DNA from: Botryllus schlosseri
Taxonomy: Eukaryota
Assembly (NCBI GenBank): GCA_051294905.1
Contig: CM119380.1
Coordinates: 18,848,001 to 18,912,000, forward strand
Direction of reading: 5' to 3'
Length of the DNA stretch: 64,000 nt
The position numbers were made by a program, and so were the translations under genes. Positions 37,901 to 61,900 of the stretch are shown here, in pieces. Position 1 is the stretch's first letter; each line of letters opens with the position of its first letter. The notes under the pieces were generated by a model. That model was given only the letters and a program-made list of their open reading frames with translations. It ran no database searches and was not told where the DNA came from.

Positions 37901-40900
37901 ACTGCCAACGCGACGTGTGGACAAGACGGGCCAGAGCGTTACTGCAGACTGGTTCAACACCACGAGAAATTATTCAGGCGTAAAAAAAGACGAAGTCACT
38001 GTGACGTAAGTAAGGGGCAGCCGCGAGTACCGTGACGCTCCCGTGATTACGTTATCGGAATCGTGATTTTGTCAATATCCCTGCTCTTGTTCAGTATCTA
38101 AACGTCCAGCGTTCTTCTGGTCAAATGATTATTTGACAAATCTTCACTGTGTTTTACAGATATGTGACGCTACAAATGTGGAGACGAGACACGACATCGA
38201 ATACGCTATTGATGGTATTGGCCGTCGATGGTGGCAAAGTCCAACAATAAACAATGGTTATAATTACAATTGGGTGACGATTTCATTGGATTTGAAGCAG
38301 GTTCGTAGCGTGCTACAGCATTTTCTCATCAGTGCATACTCCGATGATACGACTCAGAAAATGGATATTCTCTTCATATGCTTAGTGATCAAAAATTGCA
38401 GTGAGGTAACAAAATTACAGAAATATGTACAATTGTCCACTCATCTAAGGCCTGATCAGACGCAACATATTATGAAAATTGTAATCTGATGGCTAAAACC
38501 AAGTGGCTCGAGTGTGATATCGAGTTATAGTCGTTCCATCAAAATTTATACATTATTTTATGAATCGCTTATAGGTTGCAGGAGAAAATTGCCGTCCAAA
38601 AGTATCGTGTGAAAATATTATATTTCATCTCAAAAAAGAATATGATGTATTTGAGTAGTTTCGTAGTTTTGTGATGGTGATCGAAAACAGTTAGGTATCT
38701 TATTAGTATATTTCATTCTTAATTTCAATTCGGTGTTTGGGTTCAATCACACACATCTTTTTCTATCGCGTAAGAATGGATATAGTTTTCGACCTTTCAT
38801 GCAACAGGTTACGCGCGTACTTGAAATTCATTAAAGCGAACATTACATTCATCTACTGCACTTGTAATATAATCATCCGAAGGGTGTTATACCCAAATCA
38901 ATGCGTACTATCAGCGAGTTGAAATGAAGCCCGCCTAGCAAAGTCGCCGATATCTGAAGCATAGTTTGATGATTTCAAGGTTCCGTAACACATTATCGGG
39001 CAATCAATGTGATTAAAAGGCCTTTTAAAATGAGCTTATCTCCACATCACGAGCGACGCAGTTTCGTCCTCGGTGGCCTCAAATTGATGTTTCACTTACC
39101 CCGACGTTAATGTCATGATGAGCTGGATACAGTTATTTTGATAGGCCCGCTATGAGATGTTGGTACTAGGTAGCTGTCGGGGAAATGTCATCACCGTACG
39201 TATTAGTACTTCTGCCTTTCGTCTGCTGAGTGGAATAATATTTCGATATAAAGCGTATTCACTGACATCAAGCGTGACCCGCAGACGGTGTTACTTGACA
39301 TATCTTTTGTCCCACTGTGGTACAGATAGGCTTTGTAGTGAACTTAACGGATCTGATACTCGGAAGTAATTCCTCACGGCATTTTAATCGACTATTTTCA
39401 TTGCTCCTGTATTGAAAGTAAGACTTTTGAATGAAAGTTTTTCATCGCGTGTGTACAGTATCGTGAATCTCACTCCTTATGGCGGTTTATCTTGACTGCG
39501 AGTATGATGTCAAGGCAGATATTGTCGGAAGACCTGTACATGGAATGACATGCTAAAACATGTGATTAGCATAACTGCGTATAAGATTTACATTACGACC
39601 GCTATGTGGAATAATTTCGCCCTTTCATGCGATGGCGTTAAGTTAAATGGTCAAACTTACTGTATAGGATACATTGCATATGCGCAGTGGCAGTAACTCC
39701 AATAAATGGCCGCAACCATTCGATGCAGACATAACAATATATCACAGTTTAGGAACTTTGTTGCACCTTGCCGCGTGGCTTTTAACCACGCGCCATATAC
39801 CTACCGAAATTGACCCAATGAAGAAAAGACGATAGGGATGTATGCATATTGCATATGCATGCTTGTGTGCCTGGGAATATGCAGAGTAAGTCAATTTTGA
39901 AAACGCCAAAAATTTCCGGAATTCCGTATTCTATCAAATCCGCAGTGACGAGGCCGATGACAATATTGACGTCACAGATCCTTTTTTTTCGTTGGGGGGC
40001 GATGCGATGGCATTTATTACTATAGATCCTCCGATGCTTATTATAAACGCTATATTATTTTTATATGATTGAAAACATATTAATGTCTCAATCGATTTCG
40101 TTGCGCTTTGCAATATTATCTCAACGTCCCATTGTGATTATCTGCGCTATGCTTTGTTATTAGACTTGTGTTATTGTTGCGATGAATAGGATTCGACGTG
40201 AATGTAATTTCCGATTTGTAACGTGAATAACCTCGCTACTGAATCGAGTTAACAGATTGACAGATCTAACTGTTGCTTTTGTGATAAAGCGCATAATGCC
40301 CGAACGCTGTTGAATTAACCTCAACGTTCGCCGAGAAATATTTTCGTTGGCCGCAGATAGTAATCCATCGTCGCGACATGATTGGGAGTCCGCGATGTTG
40401 CAACTGTGCCCTCAATTCGTGTCTTTAGAAAAGATTGTAACGTCCGATGATGTATAGTACTTGCCAGCGACATTATGATTTCATGGCATTATCTGCGCAT
40501 AACATTGTGCGTTGTGTACACCCAATATACCACTGACACGTAATTTATGATTGTATCAAACGATTAGTTGGCGCAAATAGCCTACATATTGATTTGATGC
40601 GCATCATCCGATAAACACATGTCTTCGCATTGAAACACTCAGAACCGTGTATATATAATATATGTTTACTCGTATTACTTAGCGCCTAAGGTGTGTTATG
40701 CAAATATACATAGAGTTAATGCTACTGGTTACGGGTTGATTTTGCGTGTACTGACAAGGAATGTACATTCCAGTAAACACATCATTATGTTTTATCCTTA
40801 AAAACTATGAAATAATATATGTCCTTTGTAGACGTATCCGTTACACACGTTACACATTATGAATTATTATGATGTTGGTTTTAGAGTGTGCATTGTTGTC

Positions 40901-43900
40901 GTGTTCAAAGTCCTTCCTTGGCACTACTACAGCACTACCCGGTCTGACTATTATATATTCGGTCTGATGAAAGCACTGTGATCACGAAGTATAATTCGGT
41001 TTCGTTGCATAATTGAGTGTGTCGGGTGCCGCGCCGGCCTAAGTTATTTGCATAGGTTAACATTGGAGTATTATGGTGACAGTGATGCGTGAGGCTTAAG
41101 TACAGCGGCTCATGACCTTGCGGTGACTTTGGCAATCTCGCCCCGACGCGAGACTGTCGTGACGGCTTTGAACGCATCACTCCGGGGGAGACAGATCCTT
41201 AGAAATGACCGTGTAAGGATTTATCGCTGCGGCGCTATGACGTAATCGCTGCGGCAAAGCCTTGAAAACGTTGACCGCCGACAAAAATCAGAATTACGGA
41301 AAGTGCTGGCCGTTGGCGAAAACGCATCAATTTCGGATTGTTGACAAAACATTGTTGTTAGCCGCACAGGCAGCGGACGAAACAAACTCCAGGTCTCGGC
41401 AACGTAGCAATCGCGCAAATTGAAGCACTTACGCCTGGGCTACTGACGATTTGCTCGAGAAACGGTCTTATTTTTAGAATCCCCTGGCAATTTTGCACTC
41501 ATCCCGATTATTCTAATGCGGCAATAACCGACTCCCGTACATTTGTCATTGTATAGCGCTCAATGTAGCGTTTGTCTCGCTTTCGGCTCGAGGGATCCAT
41601 CCCCGATTTTAAGGCTGTTAATCTTCGTTAGGTATTAGGATAATATCCGACCCTTTTCGTGGCGAAGACGGCTATTAGGCCCGCTCGAGGAATGCACGCG
41701 GTTACCTAAAAGGCTAAACGCGAAAGTGCATTATGCCATTGTTGGTAATTTCAGCGGGTCACCAAATATTCCCAAGATGCGAGAATTTAGCCGATTACGG
41801 CGATTTCATCTATCGAGTACTTTGAGTTTGCGCGATTTGCGCGGCACGTCAAAGGAGGCGCGTAATTTGGCGACGATCATTGAGCAAATCGGAATTGCGA
41901 ATTGTCTTTAGGGGTGCATAACCCTTACATCACATCTCACCGCTCTAGTTACACCCTGTCATTGTCTTTTACACACAGAGGTGGTCGATATCGAATCACA
42001 TATACTTTGCCTACTTGTACTACTTGAGCGGCTATGTGTTTGACTAATTTCATTTCTACTTGAATAAATTTTAGGCACGTAGGATTTTGTAAAGTAGAAA
42101 GTACTTTTGGGAACTTTAACGAGTAAAATCGTAACAACAGGACGAAGAATTCCTTTAACCGCGGAAACTGAATAGATTTTCGAAAATAGCATCTATTTGC
42201 AGTACCATCGGTAATATTGCGTTAGTCGCGAATACACATCCATTTGCGATTTTCAAACCAGCAAGCTCCATTCACTGTTTAAAGTAAAATAAAATATACA
42301 TACTAATTACTCTAGTACTGTTCACGCCTTCACTATCTACATTCACTTGAAGTAGTTTCCATATGTCCCAGAAGTAGCTACTTCTACTTGTAACTGAGTA
42401 GACATTATAGTCTAATAAGTAATTACGTAATAACGTAACGGGAAGGTCCCTTTAAATCTCGACACAAAACCCATTTTGGACGCAAGTAAACCCGTTTGTT
42501 AATCATTTAAAGTTTGATCCTATACCTTTACAAATAATTATTTTGGGTATTATCCCCGATTGTTTGCCATCACAACAGGGGCGCCGCGGTAAGGTCTTTG
42601 CGGGTGAGCGGTTCCCATTTTCGCGCGGGTGTTAGGGGTTAATTTGCGCGGCGAGCGGTTCATCTCCACGCGTGTCGTTTGTAACACGAGCGCGAAACCC
42701 GATACGTGTCGTTGCTTAAAATTCTCGCCGAGAATCTGACGTCAGGTCACGTGACCGCGGCGGCCAACGAAATTGGTCACCTTCAAAGAATTCACGACGT
42801 AACGCGATCCCCTCGGTAAAATAATCGCCGAGTTAGGGCGCTCGGTAAGTGCAGACGGTGGCTATTTCCTCAGATGGATAATTGTTACGCGATTGAGGCG
42901 CCATTGTTTGGCCAACAGGCGACAATCTACCGACACTGCGTGTCAACGGGTTTCCGTGACTCGCGCGATGAAAAGAAAGTTTCGGACACCACCCGCTACG
43001 TACCCCTGAATGGCGTTTACGATGACGTCATCATCGTATCAATGCGTTTTCTCTCCCCAAATAAATGTACTATACGTTGAGCTATCGACTATGGAACACC
43101 TTAGAAATGTACCAGTGCTGGGCGCGACATTTTTGTCACCAGCTGACCCAGAACTACATTCAGCAAACTCGGATGTTTTCAGTAACGAAGTACATCTACG
43201 TCAACGTCTTGGGCCGCCTTAGATGAAACTACTGATAACAAACCCAGCTTACTGACAGCATAATAAATCTTGACCAAATTCCCACATAATTGACGACCTC
43301 TCACTTAGAATACTGTGTATAGGTGTAATGATGGCATCAATACATTGACGTAACTGACTTGGAAATGGCAATGCCTTTGAGCGGAGAATCACAATCTCGC
43401 CCCTTTTCTGCAACCGTGACAATCCTCTTATCGGCTATCTCCTGGGCCCATCCATCGTAACTTACAAATTGTCGCCGAAATAATCTATCGGAGATTGTTG
43501 GGATTATGCGGATCGCAACGGAATCTCGGACGAATTCCAACGATTATCGCTTTTTTTGGTTACCGTAATTCGCTTTTATTGCCACCGATACGGATTACGA
43601 CGTCCTACACAAAAATTAAGGACTGTGCTCGGCGCATAGTATATTCGTTTGCGATTGGAGTCGCTGAATTTAATTTTCCTGGCGTCTTAATAGATGATAG
43701 TCGCAACGATGTATGGAATGAGTGTAACGACATTATACTGACTACATTTTCTTTAATTTCGCTCTGGAGAGAAACTTAACGAAGCGACGAGAAATGTATC
43801 TGTTAGGTGGGGATTTGGATATTATGTCAACGGGTTATAATAATGAGTTTACTTTGCACTGACGTAATTTCGCATATGTTCGGCCGCGAATGAAGACGGG

Positions 43901-46900
43901 TTTTCTGTGATTTATTGGCCATGGACGAAATTTCATTTCGTTTCAAGTGACCTTGCTCAACGAACTGAATCTAGGATTCGATATAGACTTGAACATACCG
44001 CTATAGGAATACAATTATCGCCAGAATGCTTAAAATTATTGGAAGCTTATTAATAATAATAATATAATAATTTATAGAGCGCCGAATATACCATTATATC
44101 ATTACTACACTAGGGAGCTGTACACAAGAAGCAATAAAATATAAGAGTGAACGATTTGTTTAAAAGACGGAGTGCGTGGTTGTAGGGCAGAATGAACTGA
44201 ACACTATTGTAGTTCGAACGATCGTGTGAATAAAACGGTTTTGATTTTGCGCTTGAAAACATATAGCGAGTCAGATAATCTGATAGAAACTGGAAAATTG
44301 ATTAGTAGTATATTTAGACATTAGTAATTCAGCTCACCAAAACAATACAAAGTCTTATTACTGGAATTCTGCCCAGGCAAAAGTAGAAGCGTAGTGCTTT
44401 CCAATAATGACAAGACGCAGGACACAACTTTAATGACTCTAAAAAGTTCGAGTATTGCCGTGACGGTAACTGTTTGCGTCCGTGACTTCCATATCCGCCT
44501 CGTAAAGTACTTAGCAATATATGCATAACCTAACACCGATAAAAGTAGGTAAGTAGTATGAAATATCACTATTGCGGTCTTACTAAGTGAGTATAGCTGA
44601 TCAGTGATCAAATTGAGTGCAATATCATAGCAATCCTCAACGTACTTTGATTTCAGAGAATCATGATCCGTCATGGACCAATGCGATTGCCCATATTCAC
44701 TACATTGCCATGATAATCACGGCGCGCACTGAAATATAATTTACGTGATGTCATTCGTCACGGTCGGCTCGCCGCTTACAAAATTGAGTATTGAGCAATC
44801 ACCGCGTGTGGAAACAGCTCTCGTTATCCGTGCGATTGCTTTCAAAGCTAGGAAAAGCTTGTGATGAATCGGTTGCCGCGAATATGAATTCTATTGTGTC
44901 GTAAATAGCGTGAACGCGCGCAGTTATTATAATATCTCTTTCCCTTTTACTTTCCGGTCTTACTCTTTGGGGTGCGGGTGATTTAATTATCGCGATACGT
45001 CTGGTCTCGCTTCGGCGTTTTCAAATGCGCGATTTAGAGTCGCGCACTATTTCTGACGCGCAACTACGGTGTGCAATTTGTGCAAAGTTTTATAAAGTAT
45101 TCATTACTGGCACTCAAGTAGAACTAGCGACGTAAATATCTACTCTTGTACAAGCAGATACGTAGATTTACAAGTAAAAAGTAAGTATTCTGGGCATGGG
45201 TTTGTCTCAATAATTGAAAACTGTAGTAGAAGAGGAAGTTGCGCAAAGCCAAAACGTACTTGACTATACTTCACAATAGTAGAAATACTTATTTACTGAA
45301 CCCCCTCTGAAGGTGTGCGTGGTTCACGTATAATTGGCGATGTAAATTCACTTGGACGTGGTCAGTGACGAAATACTTCTGCCTTTTCAAAATAATCAAG
45401 TGGATTTTGTTCACTTTCTAGTTTTTTAGATTTTTTTCAAGTACATGGTATTGTATCTATAGATCGATTTCCACCACTTTTTATTAGTAAAAAAGTTACA
45501 TGGCACCTATATTACAGTGACAGATTATAACTTCGAGACTTGTGGTTATTTTGATCGCCATTCGCCATTATGCGTTAGTCTCAATCTCGCGATTGTGAAA
45601 ACTGGCACCAGGGCTTTTGAAACAAAAGTCTGCAATGACTCGTTTTGAACAGGCATTGCTTTTACTTGTACGATAGAACCAATGCTGGATAGTGTGACCA
45701 CGTCTCAATTTATGTAGATTCCTTTAGTCTGGTGATGCGCTGTAAGCATTGTCCATTTGCCACGCCACTAATTCCAGTTCGCAGTAGAAATGTACGCGGA
45801 TCTTGTGCTTTTAAATATGACTCGAGCCAGCTGTCCGTCTAATATCACAAACTGCTGATCGCTTCAATTCGTTCATCAGTATCGTGTGTGATCCGTAATC
45901 CCGTTCCGCGCAAGGTGACGTACTCTTGAAACACAAATCGCTTTAGATACCGTAAATAAACTATCGTCCACAAAACAGTTGTGTCTACAAGACGCAATCG
46001 ATTGGTAATCGGGCGAACTTTGCGAATGAGTGCGTTGGAAATTATAAAAAAAGTGAGCAATGAGCGTCGGAAGTTCCATTGCTGCCAGACAATATCATAT
46101 ACAATGAAATCCGCATTAATGCTGTAGCGTGCGGAGAAAATAACTTGAGTCGACTGGTTTACGCATGACGATATGTCACGGGTGCATACGGGAATTGATG
46201 TTTGCTTTTGTGTGCAAGATCGCACATCCGCACTTCCACGTATTTCCGAAAGCTCTGCGTTGTTTAGTTAAATATGCTCCGACCTTGATTCGACGAATAT
46301 ATCCACGAAAGATATGTTCAGTCCTGCAAAAAGATGTCTAAGTCTTGGGGTTATATACGCGCACGTGAACATTATTGTGTCTCGTGACGGTTTCATGTGG
46401 TATGTTCTCGAGTCATATATAGTTCGAATAATTTAAGACCATGATCGATCTTGGCCTAAGATGACGTCAACGCGATTGTTTGGAATCGGCGAAAATATCG
46501 TTCTCACGGTGGTGCAATAAAAGACACCGTGCCCGCTTCGGATCTAAGCCGCGTTTTCCGCATAAAAGAAATCGTAAAAGGCCATTTACTGCCTAATTCG
46601 CCAGAATTCGTGGGTTGCCCGATCACGTTCGAAGACTGATCTCCATTCACGACGAGAGCTGTTGGCTTAATTCCACGCCACATCACACGTTGACCGTTCT
46701 CATATGGCCGCTTTTTAAGAGTTTTATGGGGCGGAGGAATGAAGCGATGGAAGCCCCGTATTGACGTGCGGTTATATTTCGCCACTGTGTGACTGAGCAA
46801 AACAAATAATAAACTCCCGGATGTTCTCCCAAGCTATCCATCCTGGTCATCAAACGCGCTTGTGGACCACCTTCAGACCGCCAATGTTATGAAATAATAC

Positions 46901-49900
46901 TAACCAGAGGTGGTAAAAGATATTGGCGTTGCTACCCAAGCGGAAATAGAATTACCGCCACGAATTTCTACTCAATTACAAGTAGACGCAGCAATTTCAA
47001 AGGCGTGTCAAAACTACGTCAAGTCAAAGCTGAAAACGAATAACACAAAAAGTACCCAAATAGGTGGTTGCGAAAATTAGTTTTACTACTTCCGAAATTG
47101 CGAGGGGGATCTTCGCGACTATAACGCAATATGACTAATAACAATAACAATTAGGCGCAATCTCAAAACATAGATTCAGCAGTTACACTGTGATGGCTAT
47201 TTCACGCAGTTCTTATGATCATTTCACGCATAGAAGCGACGGAAACCTGTCCCAAAACAGATTTCCCCTATCCAAGAGTGTAAAAGTATAGTAGTTGTGT
47301 CTATAAACTGTTCAAGTAGAAGTGTAAGTATAGGCTGAAAACGAAACCACTTGAGTAAGCAGTGCTAATAGACAAAACCTACTTGACTATACTTCGAAAA
47401 ATTCGTTAGGGACCAGTGGCCACATCTGATACTAACTGGTGGGGTGCATCCATAGGGTTACATTCTAAACAAGAATCAATTTAAAACAGAGATGTTTAAA
47501 ACATGTTTTTTATTTTTATTTTCGGTTTTCTTTTCAGTCATGACGTCACGAATCATCAATTGACAGTTGACATGTAGCAGAAATATAGCTACTTCGACGA
47601 AAAACGCTTCCGACCATACTGCCATAAACACACATACTATACTATACATCGTTATGCAGCATTTGTACGGCCGGCGTTCATCATCATCATAACACCCCCG
47701 TTCCGTTCCAATGATCTATATATCTACTTGCTATAACTGTTGAACCAACAACGATTTCGAGGGTTCCAGCCACTCCATATCGTATGCGTCGACTATATTG
47801 GGTACGAATCGTCCGAATAGGCTCGTACTTCAAGTTTTCGAAAGTATTTAAATAATTATGGCATAATTATACAACGTCTGAAAAAGAACACAATTTTGTT
47901 TTTCAAAAAAAAGGCATTTGTTTAAAACACTGTTTGTTTTAAATGCAACCGTAGGTGCGTCATATTGTCTCTATTAAAGTGTTATCAGCGTTCATTGTCT
48001 ACTTATAGTAATGGAACTAGCGAAAATAATTTCAACAACCAAGCGATTTCACGGTTTGCTTGGCCGGTGAAGAGTAATTATCAAGTATTACTACTCGAAA
48101 CACAAAATCCGATCACTTAGTCCCTGAGGTAAACCCATCTTGTATGATTTACAACAGTTAGCAATGACCTCGCAGGTGTTCCAAGTGGCATACTTCATCC
48201 TGAAAGCCGGTGATTCCCCGCGCCCAGGCAATTGGATATTGGAAAAGTCCATGGACGGAATTACGTACGAACCCTGGCAGTACTTCGCCATCACAAATCA
48301 AGAATGTCGCGATCTATATCCGGGGAACAGAGTGTCGAGTTTCGGCGCTACGCGGATGTTATACGACAGCGAAGTGATATGCACTTCTTATTTTTCGAAG
48401 ATAGAACCTCTGAAGAATGGAGAAGTAAGTTCATGTTGTTATTCAGTCGAGGTGATGAATGTGTGACACCAGTCATGAAGTATTTCTGCTTTAAAAAAAA
48501 TGTTTTTCAACTACTTCCACTTCTACTTAAGATTGTTTTCACCAGTCTATAGTTACTTGTTGCACTTTGAACTTTGTGAAAAGTAGAAAGTAGTTTGGGT
48601 CATCTTCTAATTTCGAATTTAGCCCCCCCCCGATTAACTGCTAAATGTAAGCAACCAGTCGACCAAATCTACTTTTTGACACTATTTATTTTAGTACTTC
48701 TCATATACCTTCATTTACTACTAAAGACATAAGACTTAAGTGTTAATAGTTAAGCCATAAGACTTAAGTAGTTCTTACATGTTTCCGAAATCGCTATTCC
48801 TACTTATCACCGAGTAGAACTTTCCGGCGTTACTTCTACTTCTACTTGAGTATGAGCACTGACAGCTTTCACCACCTCTTGTTAGATGTCAATATCCTCC
48901 TGACAATGTTCGGACTTCGGCCACGGCTTACTGCGGCTTAGGCATGTTTTGGCATACCAAGAGCCGATTACCATAATTTTTGGTGTGCAAATAGATTTCG
49001 TTAAAATAGACTATATTCTTGTCTTTAGATCCACATTTCACTGATTAACGAGCGACCTTCTGCCGAGAATCCTTCTGAGGAGTTGATCCGGTTTATGTCA
49101 GCGCGTTACGTCAGACTGCGTTTCCAGAGGATCCACACACTGTTGGGGGATTTAATGACCCATTCCAGAGACGTCATAGACCCAATGGTCACGAAACGAG
49201 TGAGTAGTACTGGCTAGCCATTTTCATTTTCTACATCCACTGCTGTATGAGGCGATATTGGCAGCGTTCTAAGTAGGTGAGACATTGAATCAGTTGCTGA
49301 CCACGATTTCAAAAGGTTATCTATAGGTGAGAATCATTTGTATGGATTATTGATTGGCCATGATCCGATTATTATCGGAACAAGTGTTAACAGCAATCCT
49401 GTTAAGTAGCATGACTTATGGTGTGTGGAGATGTCGGACTTACCGTGTTAGCTTGGCACACTTCCTTGTAATGGTTGTCTCGTTGGCTGTTTTTGGGCTT
49501 TAGAAAAATCGCAATGGTTTTAGCATTGTCGCGTGAATTCGTCGCTATACACACGCAGGGCGTGACATTTCTTCCTGTGTATGAACACTTGCGCCCGCGG
49601 GGTGTACTAGCTGTCTCAAAATATGGACGCAAATTTGCATTGTAAAGTCAGCTGGATCCAATTAGGACAGCTCTTATAGTAGCACCGACTCCATTCCCAA
49701 ATTAATGGTGGTCACTTACGAAGTACTTCTATATTTTCGGAGCACCCAAGTACGTTTTGCCTACTTTCGCTACGTACCCAAGTAGTTAAGTTTTAGTTGT
49801 CCATTTCTACTTGAACATTGTTTTTTAGAGCAAACCACTTACACTTTACGCTTTGGATTTTTAAAAGTAGAAAGTAACTTGGGCTCAAGTTTGCCTCACT

Positions 49901-52900
49901 TTTATGAGTATTAGCATGAGTTTTCTTTTCTTCTTCCATACGAAGTAGTTTTGACATGCCTGCAACTTTCGAAGGTTGATTGTACCGTACTATAGTAGGA
50001 ACAGCGTATCCAGATTTTCGGACACTCCATATATCGTGATGATGCACGCGGGCGGCATTTGCCGCCGAGCCACCTGCGTCGAAGCACGGATTATCGGCCG
50101 CGCGCCTGTCGAAAGGCTATTCGCCTATTTGAGAAGTAGCACCTTGCTACACATCAAACGCGCTTAATACACTTGATATGAATGGACTCCGAATTTGCTG
50201 AGCGCGAAGACATTCGTCTCAAATCATTGTCGGGCAGTCATCCGCGGAGTAAATTTCGGCGATAGAACAGGCAATCAAACGCCACCGGATAACGGTAATG
50301 TGAAGCGCGCATGGGATTGGCCGGGATAATCTGCGAAATTGTCGTCCTCCTGCCCGAAATTAACCCCAAGGTAACCCAACACCGAAATTGCGATCGCGTG
50401 CGGCTTTTGAGAACTTGAGCGATCTCGATATTAATTGTGGGTTAAACTAGTTCGTACTTTGAAGATCGGGTACCCGACGGCTGTTCAAAGAGCAGAATTC
50501 TTGGACTCGAACAGTGAAATTGGCAATAGGCGCAATAACCAATTTTGATTGCGTCATTCCGTTAGATACATGTCAAGCCGAAATACTACACCCCGTAGAT
50601 ACACATACTCCCGAAATATAGATGTGTTGTGATAAGTCTATTTGCTGTCCGTTTTGTATAATATCAGAATCTGATCAAAAGTGAGCAATGAGCAATGAGC
50701 ATGTATGTATGGTATTATCGCTGTGGTTGTAAGAAGGCGCGTGCTGGCCAATCACAACAACGATAGTTATTTAAATACAGCAAAACGAATGGGCTTATTG
50801 ATCAGGGATATCTAGAACTAGAACTAGAACTAGATATCCCTGTTATTGATGTATATGACCTCATTTGTTGACGACATCAGAAAGAGAAATGTCACCTAAA
50901 GTTTTATCGTCATTACACGATATATGGATATTATTCAGTATAAATTAACATGCCTTAGTTTTTATAATGAGCCCAAAGGCACAGTTGGGACTAAACATTT
51001 TCGAGGCGAACGTCCTTATATATAGCGACAATTGAACTTGAAATTAGTAAATATGTCTGTATGAATATTAGGTATCATGGTGAGAGACCTTTTTACAGCC
51101 GCTGTTTGAATATAGGAATTGTCACCGAAATGCCCGCGTTGCAAATCCCACGTTTGTTCTGCTTTAACCAGTCGGCTAAACAGATTACCGGTAACCGGCG
51201 GGCTTATATGCTGAAGGGTGTGTTTGTACTTGGAAATATTGGAGTTCCTGTACTCAGGGATTTTCGATCGGGGCTGTGCTCTCCCAAATTCCGCCCTCCA
51301 GGTGTACAGGTGATCCTACGAATAATTTTGTTTCCGGAGCTTGGCAAGACAAGTCCTTCGCAACTATTGTAAGCGCTCTAATCCCTTTAGGTGCTTGCGG
51401 CCTGCCCCTTATATATACCGGGTTTGTCACAGATCATCGCATTCGCCCAAGTATCGGCTCAGAACCCGATCACGTTGGCTTTCACGACTCTTCAAAATCC
51501 TATTTTCCGTGATTACGTCATTACTATACGTTCAATATCCAGGATTAGTCATATAGGCGATCACTGTTCACTGATCACTGTTCGACAAATTATGAATTCG
51601 AAACATGTGGCTTATTGAGGCTGCCGATTGAATGGCGCTCTTTCCCACTTGAGCGCGACATGTTCAATTAGGAATATCGTATCACCTCAGTTTCGATGAA
51701 GCATTTCACTTCAAATCCAAAGTGTAAATTTACATACGATGATTTTGCACGCAATATGCGGTTAACGCGTGACTTCCAACACGCAAACATATAGTGTGAC
51801 AGGTTCGTTCATAGTGCCTCAAAGGGTGTACTTCGCTGATTATTGCGATCCATTTTAGTATGAACGAACGTGAACAATCGTATCGATTTAAAAGACACAC
51901 GAGTTGATATTTTATCAGCGTATGATTGTTTTAACATCGTCATGCCATTTTTCAGTAGGATACTGCCGTATCGAAGCAGACATCCTATTGTGTTTCATCT
52001 GTGATTTGCGCGTCTCAGCTCAATTTGTTACAATTTTCTAATTGGCAATGTCGTCTGGTCTTGTTCCGAATCGGATTTGGTTCAAGTCGCTTTGATTTAT
52101 TTTGTGTTGGGACATATCCGCGTCTTTAAGAAGCAAGGGAACATAAACGTAACCAAGTGAACTTCCGCTATTGAACGAATCAGACTGAAATTAATATCAT
52201 TCGACGTGAATATGCGACTATGTACCTCGCGGTATAACCGCTATTCTGTATCTCTCTCGGCAATTACCTGACGTCATTATCCGGCAGTAGTCATACGAAG
52301 TGACACCAAATACAACGAACTTCACCATAAAGCTACGGAACGGGCATTATATGCGTTTGTGTCGCTGTGCAATGCGTATAAAAGTGTTATGATTTCGCCT
52401 CAACGTTTGTACTCGTAGCTAATATAGCGGACCATATGTCTGTACTTGGTGCTCATTTATTTTGATTGTTATAACATTCCGAACCATGCTTTGTGATATG
52501 CATTGCAGTCGATATCAGCGACATTCACAGTAAAGTCTGAAGGGGTTGTTCGCATTCTACCAATGTTATTGGTTATTTCGACCCGTTGTATAGTTAGCGA
52601 AGAATATGAGGCGGTTAATTCAGTTGATATAGCTCATGATGTGTATTTAGGGTACTTGTGAGATATTTCAAACTATATCATGGCTATCGTATGAGATTGT
52701 AAATTGCTGTTTTACTAACAATAGCAGCTCCTTTCCGCATGCTTATTCCCTATTATTCAAGTGTTGATCAACCTGAATGGATTGAAATACGTATTTCTCT
52801 CGTGCATTTCCGATCTATCGAATATACTGAGGACCTCATTGGTTTGCGGTGGATGGGTGATGTATACGTGACTTGAATGGGGAAATATTGAAAACAAAAT

Positions 52901-55900
52901 CAGAGCTACCACGTATGAGGTTTTACTGCCATTGACCAGGATCTATCCTATATATTACTCTTATTTTATCAAATCGTTTGCGGTGAGTGCAATCATTCGC
53001 CGTAATTTCACAAAATTGCCTGTACCGGCATTATGGAGTTGGGATTGTCAGCACTTTCTGTCTCTGCGGTACCTGCACCATTATCGGTTTCTTCACAAAC
53101 ACGCAAATAGTCTTTAAAATATTATAAGCCGTGTATTTATTAGAATTATATTGACATGCCCGGACGCGAACACGGCAGAGTTTGCGATAATTCACGACGA
53201 TTCGCCGGTATGGATTCAGACATCAAATTTTCGGTTACGCTGTCGGCAAGGAAACAATGATTTCCTGATTTGGTCGTTAAATGTATGAGACGGCGCGCTA
53301 AGTACAACTAGTCGCTTCCTCAATTCGTATCTAATCCCCTTCTAAAAAGAACTTCATTAAGGCGAATTAGCAGCTTGAAAACGCGACATTCCTTTGTGTC
53401 TTGGTGGATCACAATTGTAATTATGATCCGAAATGTGGCTAGAATACACCTGTATCCACACGCGGCTCTCCGCCGGCTAAATAAACGAGGAATGATATCG
53501 CACAAATGGAAGGAAACGTACCTGACGACAGTCGCAATTCAACTCCATCATTCCGATATGACGTAACAATGCCACATGAGACATTCGAGTTTTACAGGCG
53601 TGATTTTACGAGCGTCGCTTGTAAAATTGTCAGCTTAGAGGCGGTATTAGATTGAATTTGTAATTGTTAACCACGCTTGGATGTATATAGAATTAACGTC
53701 AATGCGTGCGGTCGTTGCGAACAATTTACACGGTTTAAATAAGGCGTTTTTGCGATTGTGGCATGCTTTCGATTTCATTATACCTGACCACGTCAACTGC
53801 GCACCGTGTGATGTCATTGTTCAAATAATCATTCACATTGGCTAGGACTCATGTAAAACTGTGTAGATGAGTAATCGAACTTGTCCAAATCGTGTTTATT
53901 CAACCACTAATTTACTGTAATCGTCTTACTGCCACCCATGCCATTTAAAGCCACCATGAACTCGCATCTGATTTTGCTTCGAACTGATCGTGCGGGATTT
54001 GCTGCATTTGGAATACGTAATTGTACCTGTCGAGACTTTGATAGGACTGATGACAATATCCAAAACTATGTCGTAGGTCAGACATATATACATTAAGTAC
54101 AAACATACACGGCGTCCTATTCTATCCCAATTATTTCCTACATGCGTCCTCGGTTTAAGGCCAGTTTCTCAGCTGCCACTGCCGCAATGAATTCGCTCTC
54201 ATCTTGCCCCCATTTGTAATTTTGCTCACATTTGTAATTCAATGTCATAAGCTGGCGATAGGCCACTGGAACCTTGGCTCAAGTAAATCACACTACGATT
54301 ATCAGGCATCGAATACCAAGCGCTGCACAAAGGTATTTCTGTAGTACGAATACACGTTGCGCAATGTACAATTGTACATGTACATTCGACATATCCAGAC
54401 CTGGCTTGGCAAAGTCTTGAAAAAGAATGCGGCCCAATCCGCGTTGGCGAGGATGCACTTGAGTTTTCGAAATGGTGGGCGACCTATTTCTTTACTTTTG
54501 AAATCGTGCGAGGTATTTTGATCGAGCAATCGGGCGCTGCGCTGTACACAAATCAATGAAGTGCGCGGGTTTATGGCCAGGTGACGTACATGATAGACTT
54601 GCGATATGGTCGCGGTGTATTGTAGTATCTTCACGCGTTGTCGCGTTAACGTTTATAAATGGTCAGTTGCCGTTGGAAATGTACATCGCGGTAAGTGTGC
54701 CGACTTTTATTGCGACGCAATCCAGGCCGGCGAAATCGCTATTCCCTCAAATCCAAGTCGTTAAACTCATTAGACAATCGTTAATTACTGACTGCGACAC
54801 AGGAACGTTAGTGGAGCTTTTTTGGATGGAACTCGATGTGATCATGCGAGAAAATGACGATTGGACGGAATTGAGTCTCTCGCGTCGCGGTGTATAGCAA
54901 ACTGTCATGTAGAATTGTAAGCCTGTGTGGAATCTAACGACGAGAGCGTCACTCTTGGAGTCAATTGACAATTTTAATATCTTAGAGATGACGACACCGG
55001 TCTTTTTCTCCTTTTGTGCCTAAAAAAAATCTGTTCAGTTGCAAAATTTTCGGTTAAAGAGAGAAATTGGAATACGTTTGATGTTGGAATAGAATGAGAT
55101 GGGTTACGACGCTGGTTGGTCCGCTTTTATTTCCACTATACCACGATTGAGAGAGTGTTGTTGCTCTATTTTGCGCTACTGTACGCGCGACGTAATTGCG
55201 GGCTTACGTTGGTCGCGCGGCCGCTGGTGTCGTTTCAATGCTTGATTGTGCGCTGGAGATTACATAGGATAATTGTAATAGACAATGAATAGTATACGCG
55301 CGGACATTATATAATTTTCCATCGCCGCGATTGAAAATAGTGATCATTACCGGTACGATATGGCAACATGTTGTCGCCGCCTTTATATATGCTACCCCAC
55401 AAAGAGAATCGGTTTCAGATTTCGCAATTAGGAATTGATAGGAAAGACAAACAAGGATCTAGTTGGCGTTTATTATGTCAGACTCGACAGGTGATTATGG
55501 CGATTTTGTCTAAGGTACTGCAGATAAGCCGGGGGATTGCAGGGATTATTATGAGGCGCATAGTTCCAATAGCGAATACGTTAGGTGCCCATTCCAATTT
55601 GGTGAACATAGGTAGCTCAATAATACAGATTATTTAAGATACTTATGAGAAATAATTGAATTCCGTTCGGTTAGTTCAGTTTCTGATGCGTATGAAGGCT
55701 ATGTCCAGTAAAATTGGCGGTGCGGGAATATGCTTGAATGCTATATGTATTATATGGCTCGATGAATCATTGCGTTGCCGGACATTGTTTGGTTTACGTT
55801 TCCCAGTGTTTGTAGTCGACGTTATTAGGGGTGAAATAAATTCAATTGAGTATTTTCGCGTTTATACATTTCCCATCACGGGAAATAGACTCTGCGCACG

Positions 55901-58900
55901 GCGTGACTCAGGCCGTGCCGTTATATACTTGGAGGGCGTTGGTTTGACAAGTGGATCAGTCGAATTATCCGGATCTGGTGATTTAATCTGCTGTAAAACG
56001 TGCTAATCGTTCCTTAAAACAAGCGGAATCCCGTACTGGCGCGCGTTGTCGTTCATAGAATATTATCAGATTATCACGGGCTGAGCAACTATTACACTTC
56101 TTACGAATTGTCATGCCGAAGAATGCCCTGGACGCGTTTATGTGTACCATTGAGTCACTGTCGATTGGTTTTAGACTGTTTCCTCTCAAATCGCATTGTC
56201 TTCCACCGCAAAATATGATGTCGGACGGCCGGTGTTAATACCGGAATGGCCTGTCGTGAACTCAAAATATTGATTCCAAGTCTAATACGACCAGCAAAAT
56301 GAAGGCGCGTTGAACGTACTCGGCTTGCGTCGCTGTAAATGTTTGCAGTTTCGATACCTCCCACAATAAGTTTGTGTACAATTGTACATATGCACTGTGT
56401 GCGGAAGATAATATAAGAGACACCGGGACGAATAAACTGTTTGATTTCGTTGGCGCAGGCGCGTACCGATAGGCGTGGGTGGTTGCGTAAAGAGCTCCAA
56501 CGTTTCCTGTACTGTTGCTGTCATCGGTTGTCAGATCTTACCGCGGGGTGAATCTAAATCGGCTCGGGTGGGACCGATTTCATGTCGTGTCTCTTTGAAA
56601 AACGTAAGATAACATAAAACATCCAGGTAATCGGTTGATTGCCGTGGACATAGGAGTTTAAAGCATAACTGCATGATATGGTGATGTATACGCTCTGTAG
56701 TTCCACGTCTGGTCGCATGTCGCCCGCTGGAGTTAATTGGCGGATGACAAAGAATTTACGGAAAAGGGCGCTCGTTAAAATAGGCACCCGGCCACCAGAA
56801 CGATCGGATCGAGTCGACAGTTCCGCGAAATCTTTTTCTGTTATTCCATATGTCTTTCCTGCTTTCGTCTCGCGGCGTTTGCACGGGTCGTAAAATATCG
56901 CAACGTATTATTGCGACGCATTAATTTATAGGCGAATTATGTGTAGGTCGGATCGACTGATAAATCCGACGCATTTATCCAGATGCATCCGCCTATTTTC
57001 TGGTGTTGATCAGCGGTGCGAACCGTTAATTTGTGACGTGCACCGACTACATCAAGGCTATTAGCGTCTAAACGGCCACCGCACCAGGCCGGAAGCAAAG
57101 GCTTGTAGTGACAGGTCACGACCTTGACTAATATGCAGTATGAGATGTTTAATAGGTGGAGAAGTATCAACATGGTGGTATTCATACACTCGAATGGCTA
57201 TTTCAGAGGACGAGAGAGAGAGAGAAGAGACAATATTTGTATTACATCGTTTGCCTAAACAATATCAAATTGAGACTAATAGGATTAGAGCAAAGAGACC
57301 TTTAAATAAAGTTGTTGTCTTTACAGTATCATTTCAGCGCATAGGTAGATAAGTGGTTACATTATTGCAGATTACGCTGGTTCATTGCGGCCGCTTATAT
57401 TACATCATCAGGTATAATGTATTCACGTCCGAATAATATAGGATAGAAGTATGTGGAATCCTGTACTAATTATAATAATACGTCTGCCGACAAGGGAGGA
57501 TTTGTCGCAGTTTGAAGTGTGTCGTCATTGTGGAACTCGTACGTCTTCATGCGTACATGTTACTCGGTTTTAGGGTCATTTTCGGAATGAGAATGATACT
57601 ACAGCCGAAGGGTCATGTTTGTTGTGCGGTATCTATGAATACAAGTGTGTATCTCACTAACCTTCATACATTCCTCATTTCTAGACGTTAAATTGTTATA
57701 CGTGTTTGTGAATGGAGTGACTTCTGTGATCTATTGAAACATGATACTGGATTAGCGCCTACCTATTCACGTCGCTCCGTGGTAGATTTACAACAAATCA
57801 TATTCATGAACACACACCGCTAAAGCCTGAATCGCGCACACGATACGGGTGCATATATGGGCGCGGGGACTCAGTTCATCACCGAACATGACAAGGATAT
57901 ATTGTTACAAAACTACCTTCGTTTTTTGTATACTGTGGTTGACTATGGCTGAGGGACGTCCAGGACGCAGGAACGATCGTAATCACTTTTATTATCATCA
58001 CGCACCTTTTGTCGAAAGTTCCCGGTTCCGGATACCGTCCTATAGCCGGAATCCCGGGTTATTTCCTACTTCGGCACCGGAGATATCATTCGATATTTCT
58101 GCGTCTCATTCCACTGGTATATTTGGATTTAATAACCGCGGACGATATGCAAGCCTCGGACGAGCGCTGTCTTTCAGGGATCGTAGGATGTTATTAGCGA
58201 GGCGCGTGTGCCAGTGTGGCGTGTCTTCTCGTTTTGATAGAGAACACGTAAGTGTTATTTACTTGGTTTCTATGCACGCCGAGATTTGTGACATTAATTA
58301 GCGCGTGCTGGTATAGTGGATGTCGCTTGTCATAAGTACATAATCACCCAGAATCTCGGAAGGTACCTTCGAGAAATTTGAAAGTTTCCGATTGCCACGA
58401 TCGTACGGATTGACATGTTCCTGTTTTTCGTCCGTGTTTACCGCGCGTTTCCCTGTGTATTTGTTGTCTCGAGATGCACGGGTTAAGACCCGGCGGATTC
58501 GTGGCGAAACATTGAGTGTTGGGAGACTAATCCGCAAATGATCGGTAGGTTTTAGGCCGGATCAGCGGCGTTGGTGTTGTTGAGTTTAGGCTCCAGACTT
58601 CTCCGTGTCTCCATCGTTCCTGAAGGAAGCGTACTTCTGCCGGATATTGTGACTAAAATACTTGACTGTCTACGTTACGCCGGCGCGTGTCAATGCGGGT
58701 TCACGTATTAATCGCCGCAACACACCGATGATCTGTTGTTTCATTGAAAACCGCGGATGTGACAGACTTGTCGTCGGGTCAATTTGTGAACATTTCGAAT
58801 GTATAAATTCCAAACATTGGTGTACTTCCGCTGGCCGTGATGGTACCAAAATTTGATGCCAGTGATAATCTTTGTTGCTTATGTGATTATTACTATTTAC

Positions 58901-61900
58901 TTACTGTCAAAAAGTTATTTTTGCACTTGAATTTAGTTTTTATTTCGGTAATTACCAAATCGCGACATTAATTTAATGTTTTAATGATACACAGAGCTTT
59001 ACTTGCGCGGTTCTGTATTTTCTGTTGGTTTTTAATTGACTCGCACCTTCCACGAATTTAAATGTTTAATATCCACAAAATCGTAACCTTTTATGGTAGC
59101 AAGTTATTTGTTATTGTTACGAATGAAATTGTAATACATGATTTAACACTAAAATAAACGCAACATTCCAAGACTTGCCGGTATTGACCTATACGTCCGA
59201 GCATGGCAGCATATGTAAATTGGGGACGAATAATTATTTAGGGACCGGTAATAGAATTGTTGTTAGAATTGTTTTCCAGATAAACTAAGCCGGTCAATAC
59301 CATCGTCTCGCCACCGTGGGAGAAGATGCGTGGTTTAGGATCGATAATTTCGTTAAAGACATGATTAACGTTTTAATCATCACCTGAGCTTGAAAATACA
59401 CTCCAACAGCGCCATAATCCCATTCTTACTACCGTCTTATTAGCATGGCTGATTGAGGTTTTTTACTTTACGATATCTGCCGTTCTCACGCATTTACCCG
59501 GAGTAAATAATGCGCCGACACTCGGGTTTCGCATAATTTCCACCGTTCGCGTCGAAAGTATATGGTTTGAGACGGAAGAACGCCGATAATTCGACTAATC
59601 TTTACCGCTGCAATGTGCGTTCGAATCTCGGCGGTTTGTAGCCGGGTAGGCAACGGCCATTTTATTTTGAACTGTCGGCAACGCTGTAATTTCGTACTGC
59701 TGTTGAGCTGGACCTTGATCGTAAACGGATTTCAGATGAGTTGTCGATTAGTCCATTTTAAATAAGGTTGTTTTCTGTTCTATAAATAGGTTTACGGTTA
59801 CTCTTCGTGGAATAGTAAAATTAGAGTTCCGTTTAAACCGTTAGGACGATGGTGTCATCAATGCTATTTTTTTCCGTTCCGGAAAATAAGGACCAGTTGG
59901 ATTGGACGTAGTCCTAAAATTGACATGCAGATAACATCTTAACACGATTGAGTATACGCTCAATGACAAAAGCCACTTTCAGACACGATGCTGTGCAGGG
60001 TAAAAGTGCATTCGGTCGATATAGTCTTTGATGCAATAACTATTGCACATGTGCAATATACGTTTGGCAGTGCACGAGCTACGTATATGCGTTGCACATC
60101 CAACGATATGAGCAACATTTGTTTATTGCAGCGAATGTCTACATATTTAATAGCATCTTCACGTCGGTGAACTAATTTGATTGAATTGATAGTTGAGTTC
60201 AAAAATTGAATGAACGGAAATTGAATAGAGTCAGTTGATGAAATTTTCAAAAATTTTTTCAGTATTTTTACTCCGTCAAAGACATCAGCATCGGCGGGAT
60301 GTGTATTTGCCACGGGCACGCCCACGACTGCCCATCAAATCCTCTCGACGGAGTGAGTCATCCCATTCTGTTCCAACCATTCAAACTCAAACTTAGTTTC
60401 ATATTTGTCGGTTTAGAAATTCGTGTGTAAATGCGAGCACCAAACGACCGGCGACAACTGTGAGCAGTGTCTTCCGATGTATAATCAACATCGCTGGAGA
60501 CCGGGAAACGCCGGCTTTGAGTGTGAAGGTGAGAGTTGTTGCTGCGGTTGCGATCTTCCGGTAGCTCTGGAAGGGCTGCTTGTTCTCAGAATGCAATTGT
60601 CACGGACACGCATCGTCTTGCTACTATGACGAAAACGTGGAGCGACGAAAAGGGAGCCTGAACCGGAGAGGGATGAGGATAGGCGGTGGGGTTTGCGTTG
60701 GGTGCCGTGATTACACAACAGGCGTCAATTGCGAAAGGTGAATAAAGGAAAATTGTGCATTTGACTGGTACAAACACGCCAGAAGTTTGATTCCCATGTT
60801 TCGGGCGTAGGTATTTGATAACCCAAATATTTTGAGCTCATATCATTCAAAACATCATGATTTGTGTCTGGTTAAAGCTGGGGTGGGCGGTAACGAAGTA
60901 CTACTAATTTTTCGGAGTACTCAACCAGAATTTGCATACTTGGACTGAACTGGAGTGTACTGGACACAATTCGTTATAGTTTTATAATACTCCCACTACT
61001 ACTTGAATACATTTTAAGGAACAACTACTTAGATCTTACACCTTTGATTTGATGAAGTAGAAAGTCGTTTGGTGATAAGTTTGCATCATTTCTGTGAGTG
61101 AAATTGGTATATGTACCGCGTGAAATAGTCCTGTATCACGGTATGTGAATACATTTTCGAAGAATGCACTTATTTCTAGTGTCGGTATTCGCTAAAATGC
61201 ACTTTGCAATTTCTGAAGGAATAAAATCCGATTAACTGCTAAAAAGTACGCGTCGACCTCTACAAATCAGCTTTTGGAAACTATCTTGAGTACTTTCAAG
61301 ACCTCAATTTTCTGCTTCCACTTGAAGTAGTTTTGACATTTCTTGTACTTGTACTTGTAATTGAGTAGAAATTTACAGCGTCATTTCAACTTCTAATTGA
61401 GTACCAACAATTACTGCCTTGACTTCGCACCTTGCATATACCTTTCTCATTGGGAAGACCACACTTCTAAATATTCGCGCATTTTCAAGTTGCATGGACG
61501 GCTATTTCCGTCCGGCCGATGTCGACCCGAACGGGCGGTTTCCCTGTCAGCGGTGCGTTTGCAACCGTCTTGGCAGTCGGGCCACACGGGACGGCGTGGT
61601 GATGTGCATGAAATCGTTGGAGGACGGGAGAAATAGCGGGACGATGCATCCGGGAGACTGTTTTTGCAAAGATGGATTCGCTGGAGCCAATTGCGATCAG
61701 TATGTTTATAAACTATAGCAGCATATAGTAACCACGGACGGGCAAAATCCGGTGTCTGAGTGATTCGATTCCGAATTGAGTATGAGCATTCTAGTCAAGA
61801 TGAGTATTCGAGTATTCCCAAATATGACGTCAATAGAGCATCTAGATGACGTGTTAAGTTCACAGTTGAATCTTTTATGGGATAAAAAAATGCCAGTTCT

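What the first reader, a model, noticed from the sequence alone, without database searches (positions are those of the whole stretch)
57888..58247. Hidden second first exon in laminin intron 5: predicted laminin alpha lacking the LN domain
Seen: inside the 11-kb intron 5 (49200-60262) an ATG in good context (gaacATG) opens 120 codons. They begin with a signal-peptide pattern (basic MTRIYCYK, hydrophobic [14 protein letters not shown] cleavage site) and end exactly at a consensus donor cac|GTAAGT in phase 0, the phase of the next laminin exon (60263, [12 protein letters not shown]). The nearest plausible upstream acceptor (about 57685) hits a stop in phase 0, so it does not look like an internal cassette exon. 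Known: the LN domain drives laminin polymerisation, and vertebrate LAMA3 uses an internal promoter to make the short-arm-truncated alpha3A chain. Inference: an internal promoter in an alpha1/2-type gene makes a secreted chain with a novel 97-aa Arg/Ser/aromatic N-terminus (including a CQC) fused directly to LE1, which could not polymerise through its alpha LN domain. I do not know of such an isoform for alpha1/2-class chains.
Basis: partly seen in the sequence, partly recalled or inferred. Interest (0 to 1): 0.88.

Follow-up and report, generated by a model that had tools for sequence, protein, structure and literature searches.

The report
Conserved alternative first exon in laminin
A 120-codon open reading frame inside a big intron of a laminin alpha gene is a real coding exon, kept in the same place in two related species. 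It probably starts a shorter laminin that lacks its self-assembly (LN) domain, but no RNA data were available to show the splice.

Summary
ATG 57888 opens 120 codons that end at cac|GTAAGT in phase 0, the phase of laminin exon 6 (60263).

ORF length alone means nothing: 23% of simulated introns hold an ORF this long. Comparative evidence decides the case.
- An exhaustive protein search found two homologues in Logan assemblies, P0001 and P0009 (49% and 45-46% identical).
- P0009 lies in the orthologous laminin intron, on the same strand, 2.8 kb upstream of the exon 6 orthologue.
- Synonymous sites are saturated (pS 0.79), yet pN is 0.30.
- Identity by codon position is 0.60/0.74/0.42.
- All indels are in frame.
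- The gaacATG start and the phase-0 GTRAGT donor are kept.
- Similarity stops at the donor.
- Every other conserved block in the intron has stops in all frames.

The exon codes a hydrophobic signal-like N-terminus, then about 95 basic residues that are mostly disordered and match no known domain.

It replaces exons covering Laminin_N profile positions 2-215 of 233. The gene is alpha1/2-like.

Splicing to exon 6, and the origin of the 5' end, are inferred, not shown.

The idea has precedents: LAMA3A, and LamNT-differing products of the two TSSs of Drosophila wing blister. I rate it a well-supported new member of a known kind, of moderate interest.

The parts
57888..58247 (+). Alternative first coding exon, 120 codons, phase 0 at its 3' end
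   Evidence: Open frame. Homologues P0001 and P0009 at E 1.5e-27 and 3e-61. Syntenic in L001 at 4963-5349. pN 0.30 against pS 0.79; codon-position identity 0.60/0.74/0.42, chi-square p 3e-6. It is the only block in the intron conserved in one open frame.
57888..57956 (+). Signal-peptide-like N-terminus, residues 1-23: basic start, hydrophobic core, T-M-A before E-G
   Evidence: Kyte-Doolittle 11-residue maximum is 2.41 here, and 2.52 in P0001 and P0009, against at most 1.15 elsewhere in the exon. AlphaFold2 helix at residues 3-22. No SignalP was available.
58176..58187 (+). Conserved basic motif R-D-R-R (K-E-R-R in both relatives) followed by [ML]-L-L-A-R; a candidate proprotein-convertase site
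   Evidence: Alignment A3 and motif list. Cleavage is inference only.
58209..58217 (+). Conserved C-x-C (CQC; CRC in relatives), the only cysteines after the signal region
   Evidence: Invariant columns C108 and C110 in A3.
58248..58253 (+). 5' splice site GTAAGT
   Evidence: Window cac|GTAAGTgt; L001 cat|GTGAGTgt at the homologous codon. All three read-through products show V-S-V and then diverge.
60263..60352 (+). Laminin exon 6, the proposed acceptor: last LN strand [12 protein letters not shown] plus the start of LE1, phase 0
   Evidence: Orthologue at L001:8165-8254 is 93% identical, with the same tttttcag|tattttta acceptor.
49029..49199 (+). Laminin exon 5, the last LN exon bypassed by the proposed isoform
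   Evidence: Laminin_N profile positions 169-215. Donor cga|GTGAGT.
56973..57080 (.). Conserved non-coding block about 0.8 kb upstream of the ATG; candidate regulatory element for the exon
   Evidence: 78% identity to L001:3657-3764. Stops in all frames. Alignment shows TTAATTTGTGACGT and AGGTCACGACCT kept. The regulatory function is inferred.

Best explanation
The 120 codons at 57888-58247 are a conserved alternative first coding exon of the laminin alpha1/2-like gene. A transcript whose 5' end lies within intron 5 starts translation at ATG 57888. The 5' end could come from an internal promoter, an upstream non-coding exon, or spliced-leader addition; this is unresolved. The exon supplies its own signal peptide. 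It splices from the conserved phase-0 donor at 58247 to the acceptor of exon 6 at 60263.

The product would be a laminin alpha chain that lacks about 92% of the LN domain (Laminin_N profile positions 2-215 of 233). In its place it carries about 95 basic residues (pI about 11), largely disordered and rich in Arg, Ser and aromatics. This region has one predicted helix, a conserved [RK]-[DE]-R-R motif and a C-x-C.

By analogy with alpha3A and alpha4, a trimer holding this chain could not complete the alpha-beta-gamma LN node. It would behave as a non-polymerising laminin.

Shown: coding constraint, synteny, conserved start and donor, phase match, and the class of the host gene. Inferred: the splice partner, the origin of the 5' end, secretion, processing and the effect on polymerisation.
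For: - Homologues exist only as one small family. P0001 is 49% identical (BLASTP) at E 1.5e-27 against 1.84 billion representatives. P0009 is 45-46% identical.
- Synteny: in L001 the homologue at 4963-5349 is on the same strand, 2.8 kb upstream of the orthologues of exons 6, 7 and 8 (93%, 78% and 90% amino-acid identity).
- Coding constraint: pS is 0.79 (saturated, as in laminin exons, 0.77) but pN is 0.30. Second codon positions are most conserved and third least (chi-square p 3e-6). Indels are all multiples of three. Frame 0 has no stops in either species, against 2-14 in the other five frames. A 129-codon frame stays open by chance with probability about 0.001.
- The gaacATG start and the GTRAGTgt donor sit at homologous codons, and both exon ends are in phase 0 with exon 6 in both species.
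- Similarity ends at the donor. P0001 and P0009 are 75% identical in the body, but after V-S-V their tails differ (FVWEF against QIFVFF).
- No other frame-specific conserved block lies between the exon and exon 6. The conserved blocks there have stops in all frames.
- A hydrophobic N-terminal core is present in all three species, as a first exon of a secreted protein requires.
- The host gene is alpha1-like: 8dmk at E 1.8e-25, alpha5 at 4e-17. Its order is Laminin_N, EGF_laminin, Laminin_B.
- Precedents for the mechanism: LAMA3A (PMC8388930) and Drosophila wb (PMC11724274).
Against: - There is no RNA evidence of any kind. The 58247-60263 junction and the 5' end are unobserved.
- The protein databases held no spliced product of 66-240 aa that begins with this exon. 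It is unknown whether RNA-seq of these species is in them.
- The 800 nt upstream of the ATG are not alignable between species, apart from a short GGGCG about 26-30 nt upstream. No promoter could be tested.
- Several upstream ATGs would lie in the leader if it began at the acceptor-like sites (57685; L001 4873).
- The exon evolves about 5-6 times faster at non-synonymous sites than laminin exons 6-8 (dN 0.38 against 0.068).
- It has no recognisable domain, and AlphaFold2 confidence is low (pLDDT 45).
- The isoform would keep an orphan last LN strand of 12 residues.
- Only two relatives are known, and their species are unidentified.
Confidence: 0.62

Rival explanations
1. It is the first or only coding exon of a separate gene nested in the laminin intron on the same strand. 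The product would be a small, basic secreted protein. It could be the unspliced 137-aa read-through product, or the exon joined to a short, poorly conserved exon before 60263.
For: - The ORF with its read-through tail is a complete ATG-to-stop frame of 137-138 aa in all three species.
- The sequence has no similarity to laminin or to any domain.
- It evolves much faster than the laminin exons.
- Signal peptide plus conserved dibasic sites also fit a small secreted precursor.
- No junction data exist.
Against: - The tails after the donor are unconserved even between the 75%-identical P0001 and P0009, while V-S-V (the GTRAGTGT donor) is kept. This argues that the exon is spliced there.
- No second frame-specific conserved block lies before exon 6.
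- The phase match with exon 6 holds in both species, which would happen one time in three by chance.
- Same-strand nested genes are rarer than alternative first exons (general knowledge).
Confidence: 0.22
2. It is a regulated exon of the full-length laminin transcript, spliced in after exon 5 through an upstream acceptor such as 57685. It would introduce a stop, acting as a poison or regulatory exon, and its ORF would not be the point.
For: Strong acceptor-like sites lie upstream of the ATG in both species: tttctag at 57685 and attttag at L001 4873. Both are followed by stops.
Against: A poison exon needs no conserved 120-codon frame, no conserved ATG context, no hydrophobic N-terminus and no dN<dS signature. 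The sequence between the acceptor-like sites and the ATG is not conserved.
Confidence: 0.06
3. It is a chance ORF in neutral intron sequence.
For: An ORF of this length is expected in 23% of simulated introns. It matches no known domain.
Against: - Protein-level homologues at E 1e-27 or better, at a syntenic site, while synonymous sites are saturated and the immediate flanks cannot be aligned.
- The frame is open in three species.
- The codon-position pattern has chi-square p 3e-6.
Confidence: 0.02

Closest known systems
Vertebrate LAMA3A (laminin alpha3A, made from an alternative promoter and first exon inside LAMA3)
   Same: A first exon inside a laminin alpha gene, downstream of the LN-coding exons. 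It carries its own start and signal peptide and joins the common downstream exons, giving an LN-less, non-polymerising alpha chain (PMC8388930; PMC11260871).
   Different: LAMA3 belongs to the alpha3/5 class and alpha3A drops most of the short arm. Here the gene is alpha1/2-like. Only the LN domain would be dropped, with LEa and L4 kept. The new N-terminus is about 95 residues of orphan basic sequence. The junction and the promoter are shown for LAMA3A but not here.
Drosophila wing blister (laminin alpha1,2), alternative TSS isoforms
   Same: An alpha1/2-class gene with two TSSs seen by CAGE-seq. The predicted products differ in having the LamNT domain: it is present with the upstream TSS, and as I read the text absent with the downstream one (PMC11724274). 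This is a precedent in the same chain class.
   Different: I could not compare exon structures or N-terminal sequences. The wb isoforms also differ in LamB and EGF_Lam content through splicing. No sequence relative of the present exon was found outside its two close relatives.
Laminin alpha4 and gamma2 (constitutively LN-less chains)
   Same: The same functional outcome is predicted: a chain that cannot contribute an LN domain to the three-arm polymer node (PMC8388930, PMC11260871).
   Different: Those are separate genes with truncated short arms, not isoforms of a full-length gene.
Bacterial FG-GAP-like repeat proteins with 'HPRMLADVNGD...GFG' repeats (P0002, P0004-P0008)
   Same: Weak local resemblance of residues 49-96 to each roughly 50-residue repeat. 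The best single-pair match is 33% identical, E 5e-6.
   Different: The library E-values are inflated by 4-10 repeats per protein. The matched residues (SLGRALSF) are not kept in P0001 or P0009. There is no Pfam support. I treat this as chance.

Membership tests
Alternative first exon giving an LN-less laminin alpha isoform (LAMA3A type) | Lies inside a laminin alpha gene, on the same strand, downstream of the LN-coding exons and upstream of LE-coding exons | tested here: met
   Exons 2-5 match Laminin_N positions 2-215 of 233 and lie at 37853-49199. The exon is at 57888-58247. The LE exons start at 60263. The arrangement is the same in L001.
Alternative first exon giving an LN-less laminin alpha isoform (LAMA3A type) | Protein-coding, and under purifying selection | tested here: met
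   pN 0.30 against pS 0.79; codon-position identity 0.60/0.74/0.42; in-frame indels; frame open in three species.
Alternative first exon giving an LN-less laminin alpha isoform (LAMA3A type) | Own start codon and signal peptide | tested here: inconclusive
   The gaacATG start is conserved, and all three species have a hydrophobic core with a Kyte-Doolittle mean of 2.4-2.5. No dedicated signal-peptide predictor was available and no secretion data exist.
Alternative first exon giving an LN-less laminin alpha isoform (LAMA3A type) | Donor site in phase with the next common exon | tested here: met
   cac|GTAAGT and cat|GTGAGT, both phase 0. Exon 6 is in phase 0 in both species.
Alternative first exon giving an LN-less laminin alpha isoform (LAMA3A type) | A transcript that joins the exon to the common exons | not testable with these tools
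   No RNA data could be reached. The protein databases gave only unspliced genomic ORFs.
Alternative first exon giving an LN-less laminin alpha isoform (LAMA3A type) | Own promoter or TSS | not testable with these tools
   The upstream sequence is not conserved, apart from a block 0.8 kb upstream (56973-57080) and a GGGCG about 26-30 nt upstream. No eukaryotic promoter tool or CAGE data were available.
Laminin alpha1/2 class | LN domain closest to alpha1/alpha2 rather than alpha3/5, beta, gamma or netrin | tested here: met
   Exon 4 matches laminin alpha-1 (8dmk) at E 1.8e-25, alpha-5 at 4.3e-17, and netrins at 1e-5 or weaker. No beta or gamma chain reached 0.01.
Laminin alpha1/2 class | Full domain order: LN, LEa, L4a, LEb, L4b, LEc, coiled coil, LG1-5 | tested here: inconclusive
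   Only LN, the LE repeats and the first Laminin_B lie inside the window. The rest of the gene is beyond 64000.

The most novel reading that the evidence does not exclude
An invertebrate lineage has kept an LN-less isoform of its alpha1/2-type laminin across a divergence deep enough to saturate synonymous sites. The isoform starts from an orphan exon that adds a basic, disordered pro-region of about 95 residues. This region carries a conserved convertase-like R-x-R-R site and a C-x-C. The 5' end may be made by spliced-leader addition inside the intron rather than by a promoter. This would make non-polymerising laminins a regulated feature of basement membranes outside vertebrates, built on a new N-terminal module.
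Probability: 0.45. Interest if true: 0.6.

Novelty: new member of a known kind. Interest (0 to 1): 0.5.

Why it matters
Laminin networks form only when each trimer contributes an alpha, a beta and a gamma LN domain. In vertebrates, LN-less chains (alpha3A, alpha4, gamma2) tune basement-membrane stiffness and assembly.

A conserved LN-less isoform of the alpha1/2-type chain in an invertebrate would mean the switch between polymerising and non-polymerising laminin can be made within one gene. Together with Drosophila wb, it would suggest that this switch is widespread or recurrent.

The exon is short, specific and conserved, so it offers a clean handle for isoform-specific knock-out or in situ work.

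For genome annotation, it shows that a first exon hidden 8.7 kb into an intron can be recovered from two unannotated read-through ORFs in raw assemblies.

Tried and rejected
- ORF length as evidence: rejected. 23% of simulated introns reach 137 codons.
- Transposon or repeat origin: the region is not repeated in the window.
- Known domains: Pfam on all three proteins, a PDB profile search and AlphaFold2 (pLDDT 45) gave nothing. I did not run fold searches on so poor a model.
- Bacterial FG-GAP-like hits: judged repeat-inflated chance, because the matched residues are not conserved in the two true homologues.
- Structured RNA: there are no Rfam hits in intron 5. The 302-nt conserved block shows no fold signal (z 0.11, one compensatory pair).
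- A second coding exon between 58248 and 60262: none found by tblastx.
- Internal cassette reading: excluded by the upstream in-frame stop and the out-of-frame AG.
- More homologues or spliced products: two further profile searches returned only P0001 and P0009.
- DNA of the P0001 contig could not be fetched.
- Identifying the species failed. The SRA run numbers appear in no held paper, and earlier notes name no taxon.
- Fahey and Degnan 2012, on laminin family evolution, is not held.

Full report
**Observation**

- ATG 57888, in the context gaacATG, opens 120 codons.
- They end at cac|GTAAGTgt (58247|58248).
- Unspliced, the frame continues 17 codons to a stop at 58299-58301.
- Laminin exon 5 ends at 49199 (cga|GTGAGT) in phase 0.
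- Exon 6 begins at 60263 after ttttttcag and reads [12 protein letters not shown] in phase 0.

The ORF frame is closed upstream at 57828-57830. The only AG between that stop and the ATG (57873-57874) would start an exon 13 nt before the ATG, which is out of frame. The acceptor-like tttctag at 57685 meets TGA after eight codons. An in-frame internal cassette is therefore excluded.

**Is it more than chance?**

Length alone says nothing. In 300 second-order Markov simulations of the 11,063-nt intron, 23% held an ATG ORF of 137 codons or more (12% on the + strand). The window has three longer ORFs and one of nearly the same length. The region is not repeated in the window and matches no Pfam family.

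**Comparative evidence**

- An exhaustive HMMER search of 1.84 billion representative proteins found one true relative, P0001. It has 137 aa, E is 1.5e-27, and it is 49% identical by BLASTP. It comes from a 1,579-bp Logan contig of SRR25569784, whose DNA could not be fetched.
- A profile search found a second relative, P0009. It has 138 aa and comes from a 17-kb Logan contig of SRR23343704, fetched as L001.
- Both are unannotated ATG-to-stop ORFs called on what look like genomic contigs.
- Two further searches found nothing else.

**Synteny**

In L001 the homologue lies at 4963-5349 on the + strand. Orthologues of the laminin exons follow it:

| Exon | L001 position | Amino-acid identity |
|---|---|---|
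| 6 | 8165-8254 | 93% |
| 7 | 8317-8427 | 78% |
| 8 | 8497-8649 | 90% |

The ORF therefore sits in the same intron and orientation, 2.8 kb upstream of exon 6. In the window the distance is 2.0 kb.

**Coding signature**

- Over 118 aligned codons, identity is 0.60, 0.74 and 0.42 at codon positions 1, 2 and 3 (chi-square p 3e-6).
- pS is 0.79, which is saturated, as in laminin exons 6-8 (0.77). pN is only 0.30.
- All indels are multiples of three.
- Frame 0 has no stops in either species. The other five frames have 2-14.
- At the intron's stop-codon frequency, 129 codons stay open by chance with probability about 0.001.
- At the DNA level, blastn aligns only the last 68 nt of the exon. The immediate flanks do not align.

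So the similarity is held at the protein level and is not neutral residue.

**Exon boundaries**

- The start context is gaacATG in both species.
- The donor is cac|GTAAGTgt in the window and cat|GTGAGTgt in L001, at the homologous histidine codon. Both are in phase 0.
- The exon 6 acceptor is in phase 0 in both.
- All three read-through products show V-S-V, the translation of GTRAGTGT, and then diverge. P0001 and P0009 are 75% identical in the body, yet their tails read FVWEF and QIFVFF.

Coding constraint therefore ends at the donor, as expected of a spliced exon.

**What lies between the exon and exon 6**

The intron holds a collinear series of conserved blocks: 54739-54799, 55955-56018, 56149-56275, 56973-57080, 58515-58602 and 59308-59609. 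All of them have stops in every frame in one or both species. The largest has 1-nt indels. The alternative exon is the only block conserved in a single open frame. No second conserved coding exon precedes exon 6, which makes exon 6 the simplest splice partner.

**The product**

- Residues 1-23 form a signal-like segment. The hydrophobic 11-mer scores 2.41 on the Kyte-Doolittle scale (2.52 in both relatives), against at most 1.15 elsewhere in the exon. AlphaFold2 places a helix at residues 3-22.
- The rest is basic (pI 10.5-11.2), rich in Arg, Ser and aromatic residues, and predicted to be mostly disordered. Mean pLDDT is 45, with one helix at residues 96-111.
- Conserved features are H-H-x-P-F, F-P-T-S, F-D-[IV]-S, G-F, [RK]-[DE]-R-R-[ML]-L-L-A-R and V-C-x-C-G-V-S.
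- R-D-R-R fits the furin-type consensus. Cleavage there is only an inference.
- There is no Pfam or PDB relative.
- The bacterial repeat proteins match through 4-10 copies of a weak motif. The matched residues are not kept in P0001 or P0009. I treat them as chance.

**The host gene**

- Exons 2-5 match Laminin_N profile positions 2-215 of 233.
- The first 12 residues of exon 6 supply the rest. They are followed by EGF_laminin repeats and Laminin_B.
- Exon 4 is closest to laminin alpha-1 (8dmk, E 1.8e-25), then alpha-5 (4.3e-17), then netrins.

The alpha1/2 assignment holds as far as the window reaches. The isoform would lose about 92% of the LN domain and keep its last strand.

**Mechanism and its limits**

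The best reading is an alternative first exon that gives an LN-less alpha chain. By established laminin biology, such a chain cannot complete the alpha-beta-gamma LN node (PMC8388930, PMC11260871).

The junction, the 5' end and secretion are not shown.
- The 800 nt upstream of the ATG are not conserved, apart from a short GGGCG about 26-30 nt upstream.
- A conserved block 0.8 kb upstream (56973-57080) carries TTAATTTGTGACGT and AGGTCACGACCT. It may be regulatory.
- Earlier notes on this genome suggest spliced-leader trans-splicing. An internal promoter is therefore not the only route to the 5' end.

The main rival is a nested gene for a small secreted protein. The unconserved tails, the conserved donor, the phase match and the lack of a second exon argue against it, but only cDNA can exclude it.

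**Comparison with what is known**

- LAMA3A is the textbook case of an internal first exon giving an LN-less alpha chain.
A CAGE study of Drosophila ovaries reports two TSSs in wing blister (laminin alpha1,2). Their predicted products differ in having LamNT (PMC11724274).
- The 1999 wb paper saw two transcripts of 11 and 10.5 kb and left their origin open.

The present case is therefore a new member of a known kind. What is new is the orphan N-terminal exon and its conservation.

**Verdict**

- Observation: confirmed.
- Confidence in the LN-less isoform reading: 0.62.
- Interest: 0.5.

Noticed in passing
window 59308-59609 (L001:7117-7416): A 302-nt block that is 80% identical between the two species, which is better conserved at the DNA level than the laminin exons. 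It has stops in all frames and 1-nt indels. There is no Rfam hit and no fold signal (z 0.11). It holds several TAAT-type motifs (CATGATTAA, TAATCC, TTATTAGC). It is probably an intronic enhancer, lying between the alternative exon and exon 6.
   Followed up: partly
window 54739-54799, 55955-56018, 56149-56275, 56396-56435, 56973-57080, 58515-58602: A collinear series of short conserved non-coding blocks (72-82% identity to L001) in intron 5, although synonymous sites are saturated. This looks like a cluster of regulatory elements around the alternative exon.
   Followed up: partly
window 34322-35017: The ORF containing laminin exon 1 is the longest ATG ORF in the window (232 codons). It has a long open leader before the hydrophobic segment. 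This is the subject of another note (s1-243984).
   Followed up: no
window 1372-2275 and 30222-31241; 743-1009 and 2912-3178: An interspersed repeat of about 0.9 kb is present twice in direct orientation (77-95% identity), 28.85 kb apart. Separately, a 267-nt inverted repeat pair (89%) flanks 1.9 kb near the window start. These are likely transposon copies upstream of the laminin gene.
   Followed up: no
L001:4951-4953: In the related species an in-frame ATG lies four codons upstream of the conserved start (ATG GAA CGG AAC ATG), in a poorer context. The window has no counterpart.
   Followed up: no
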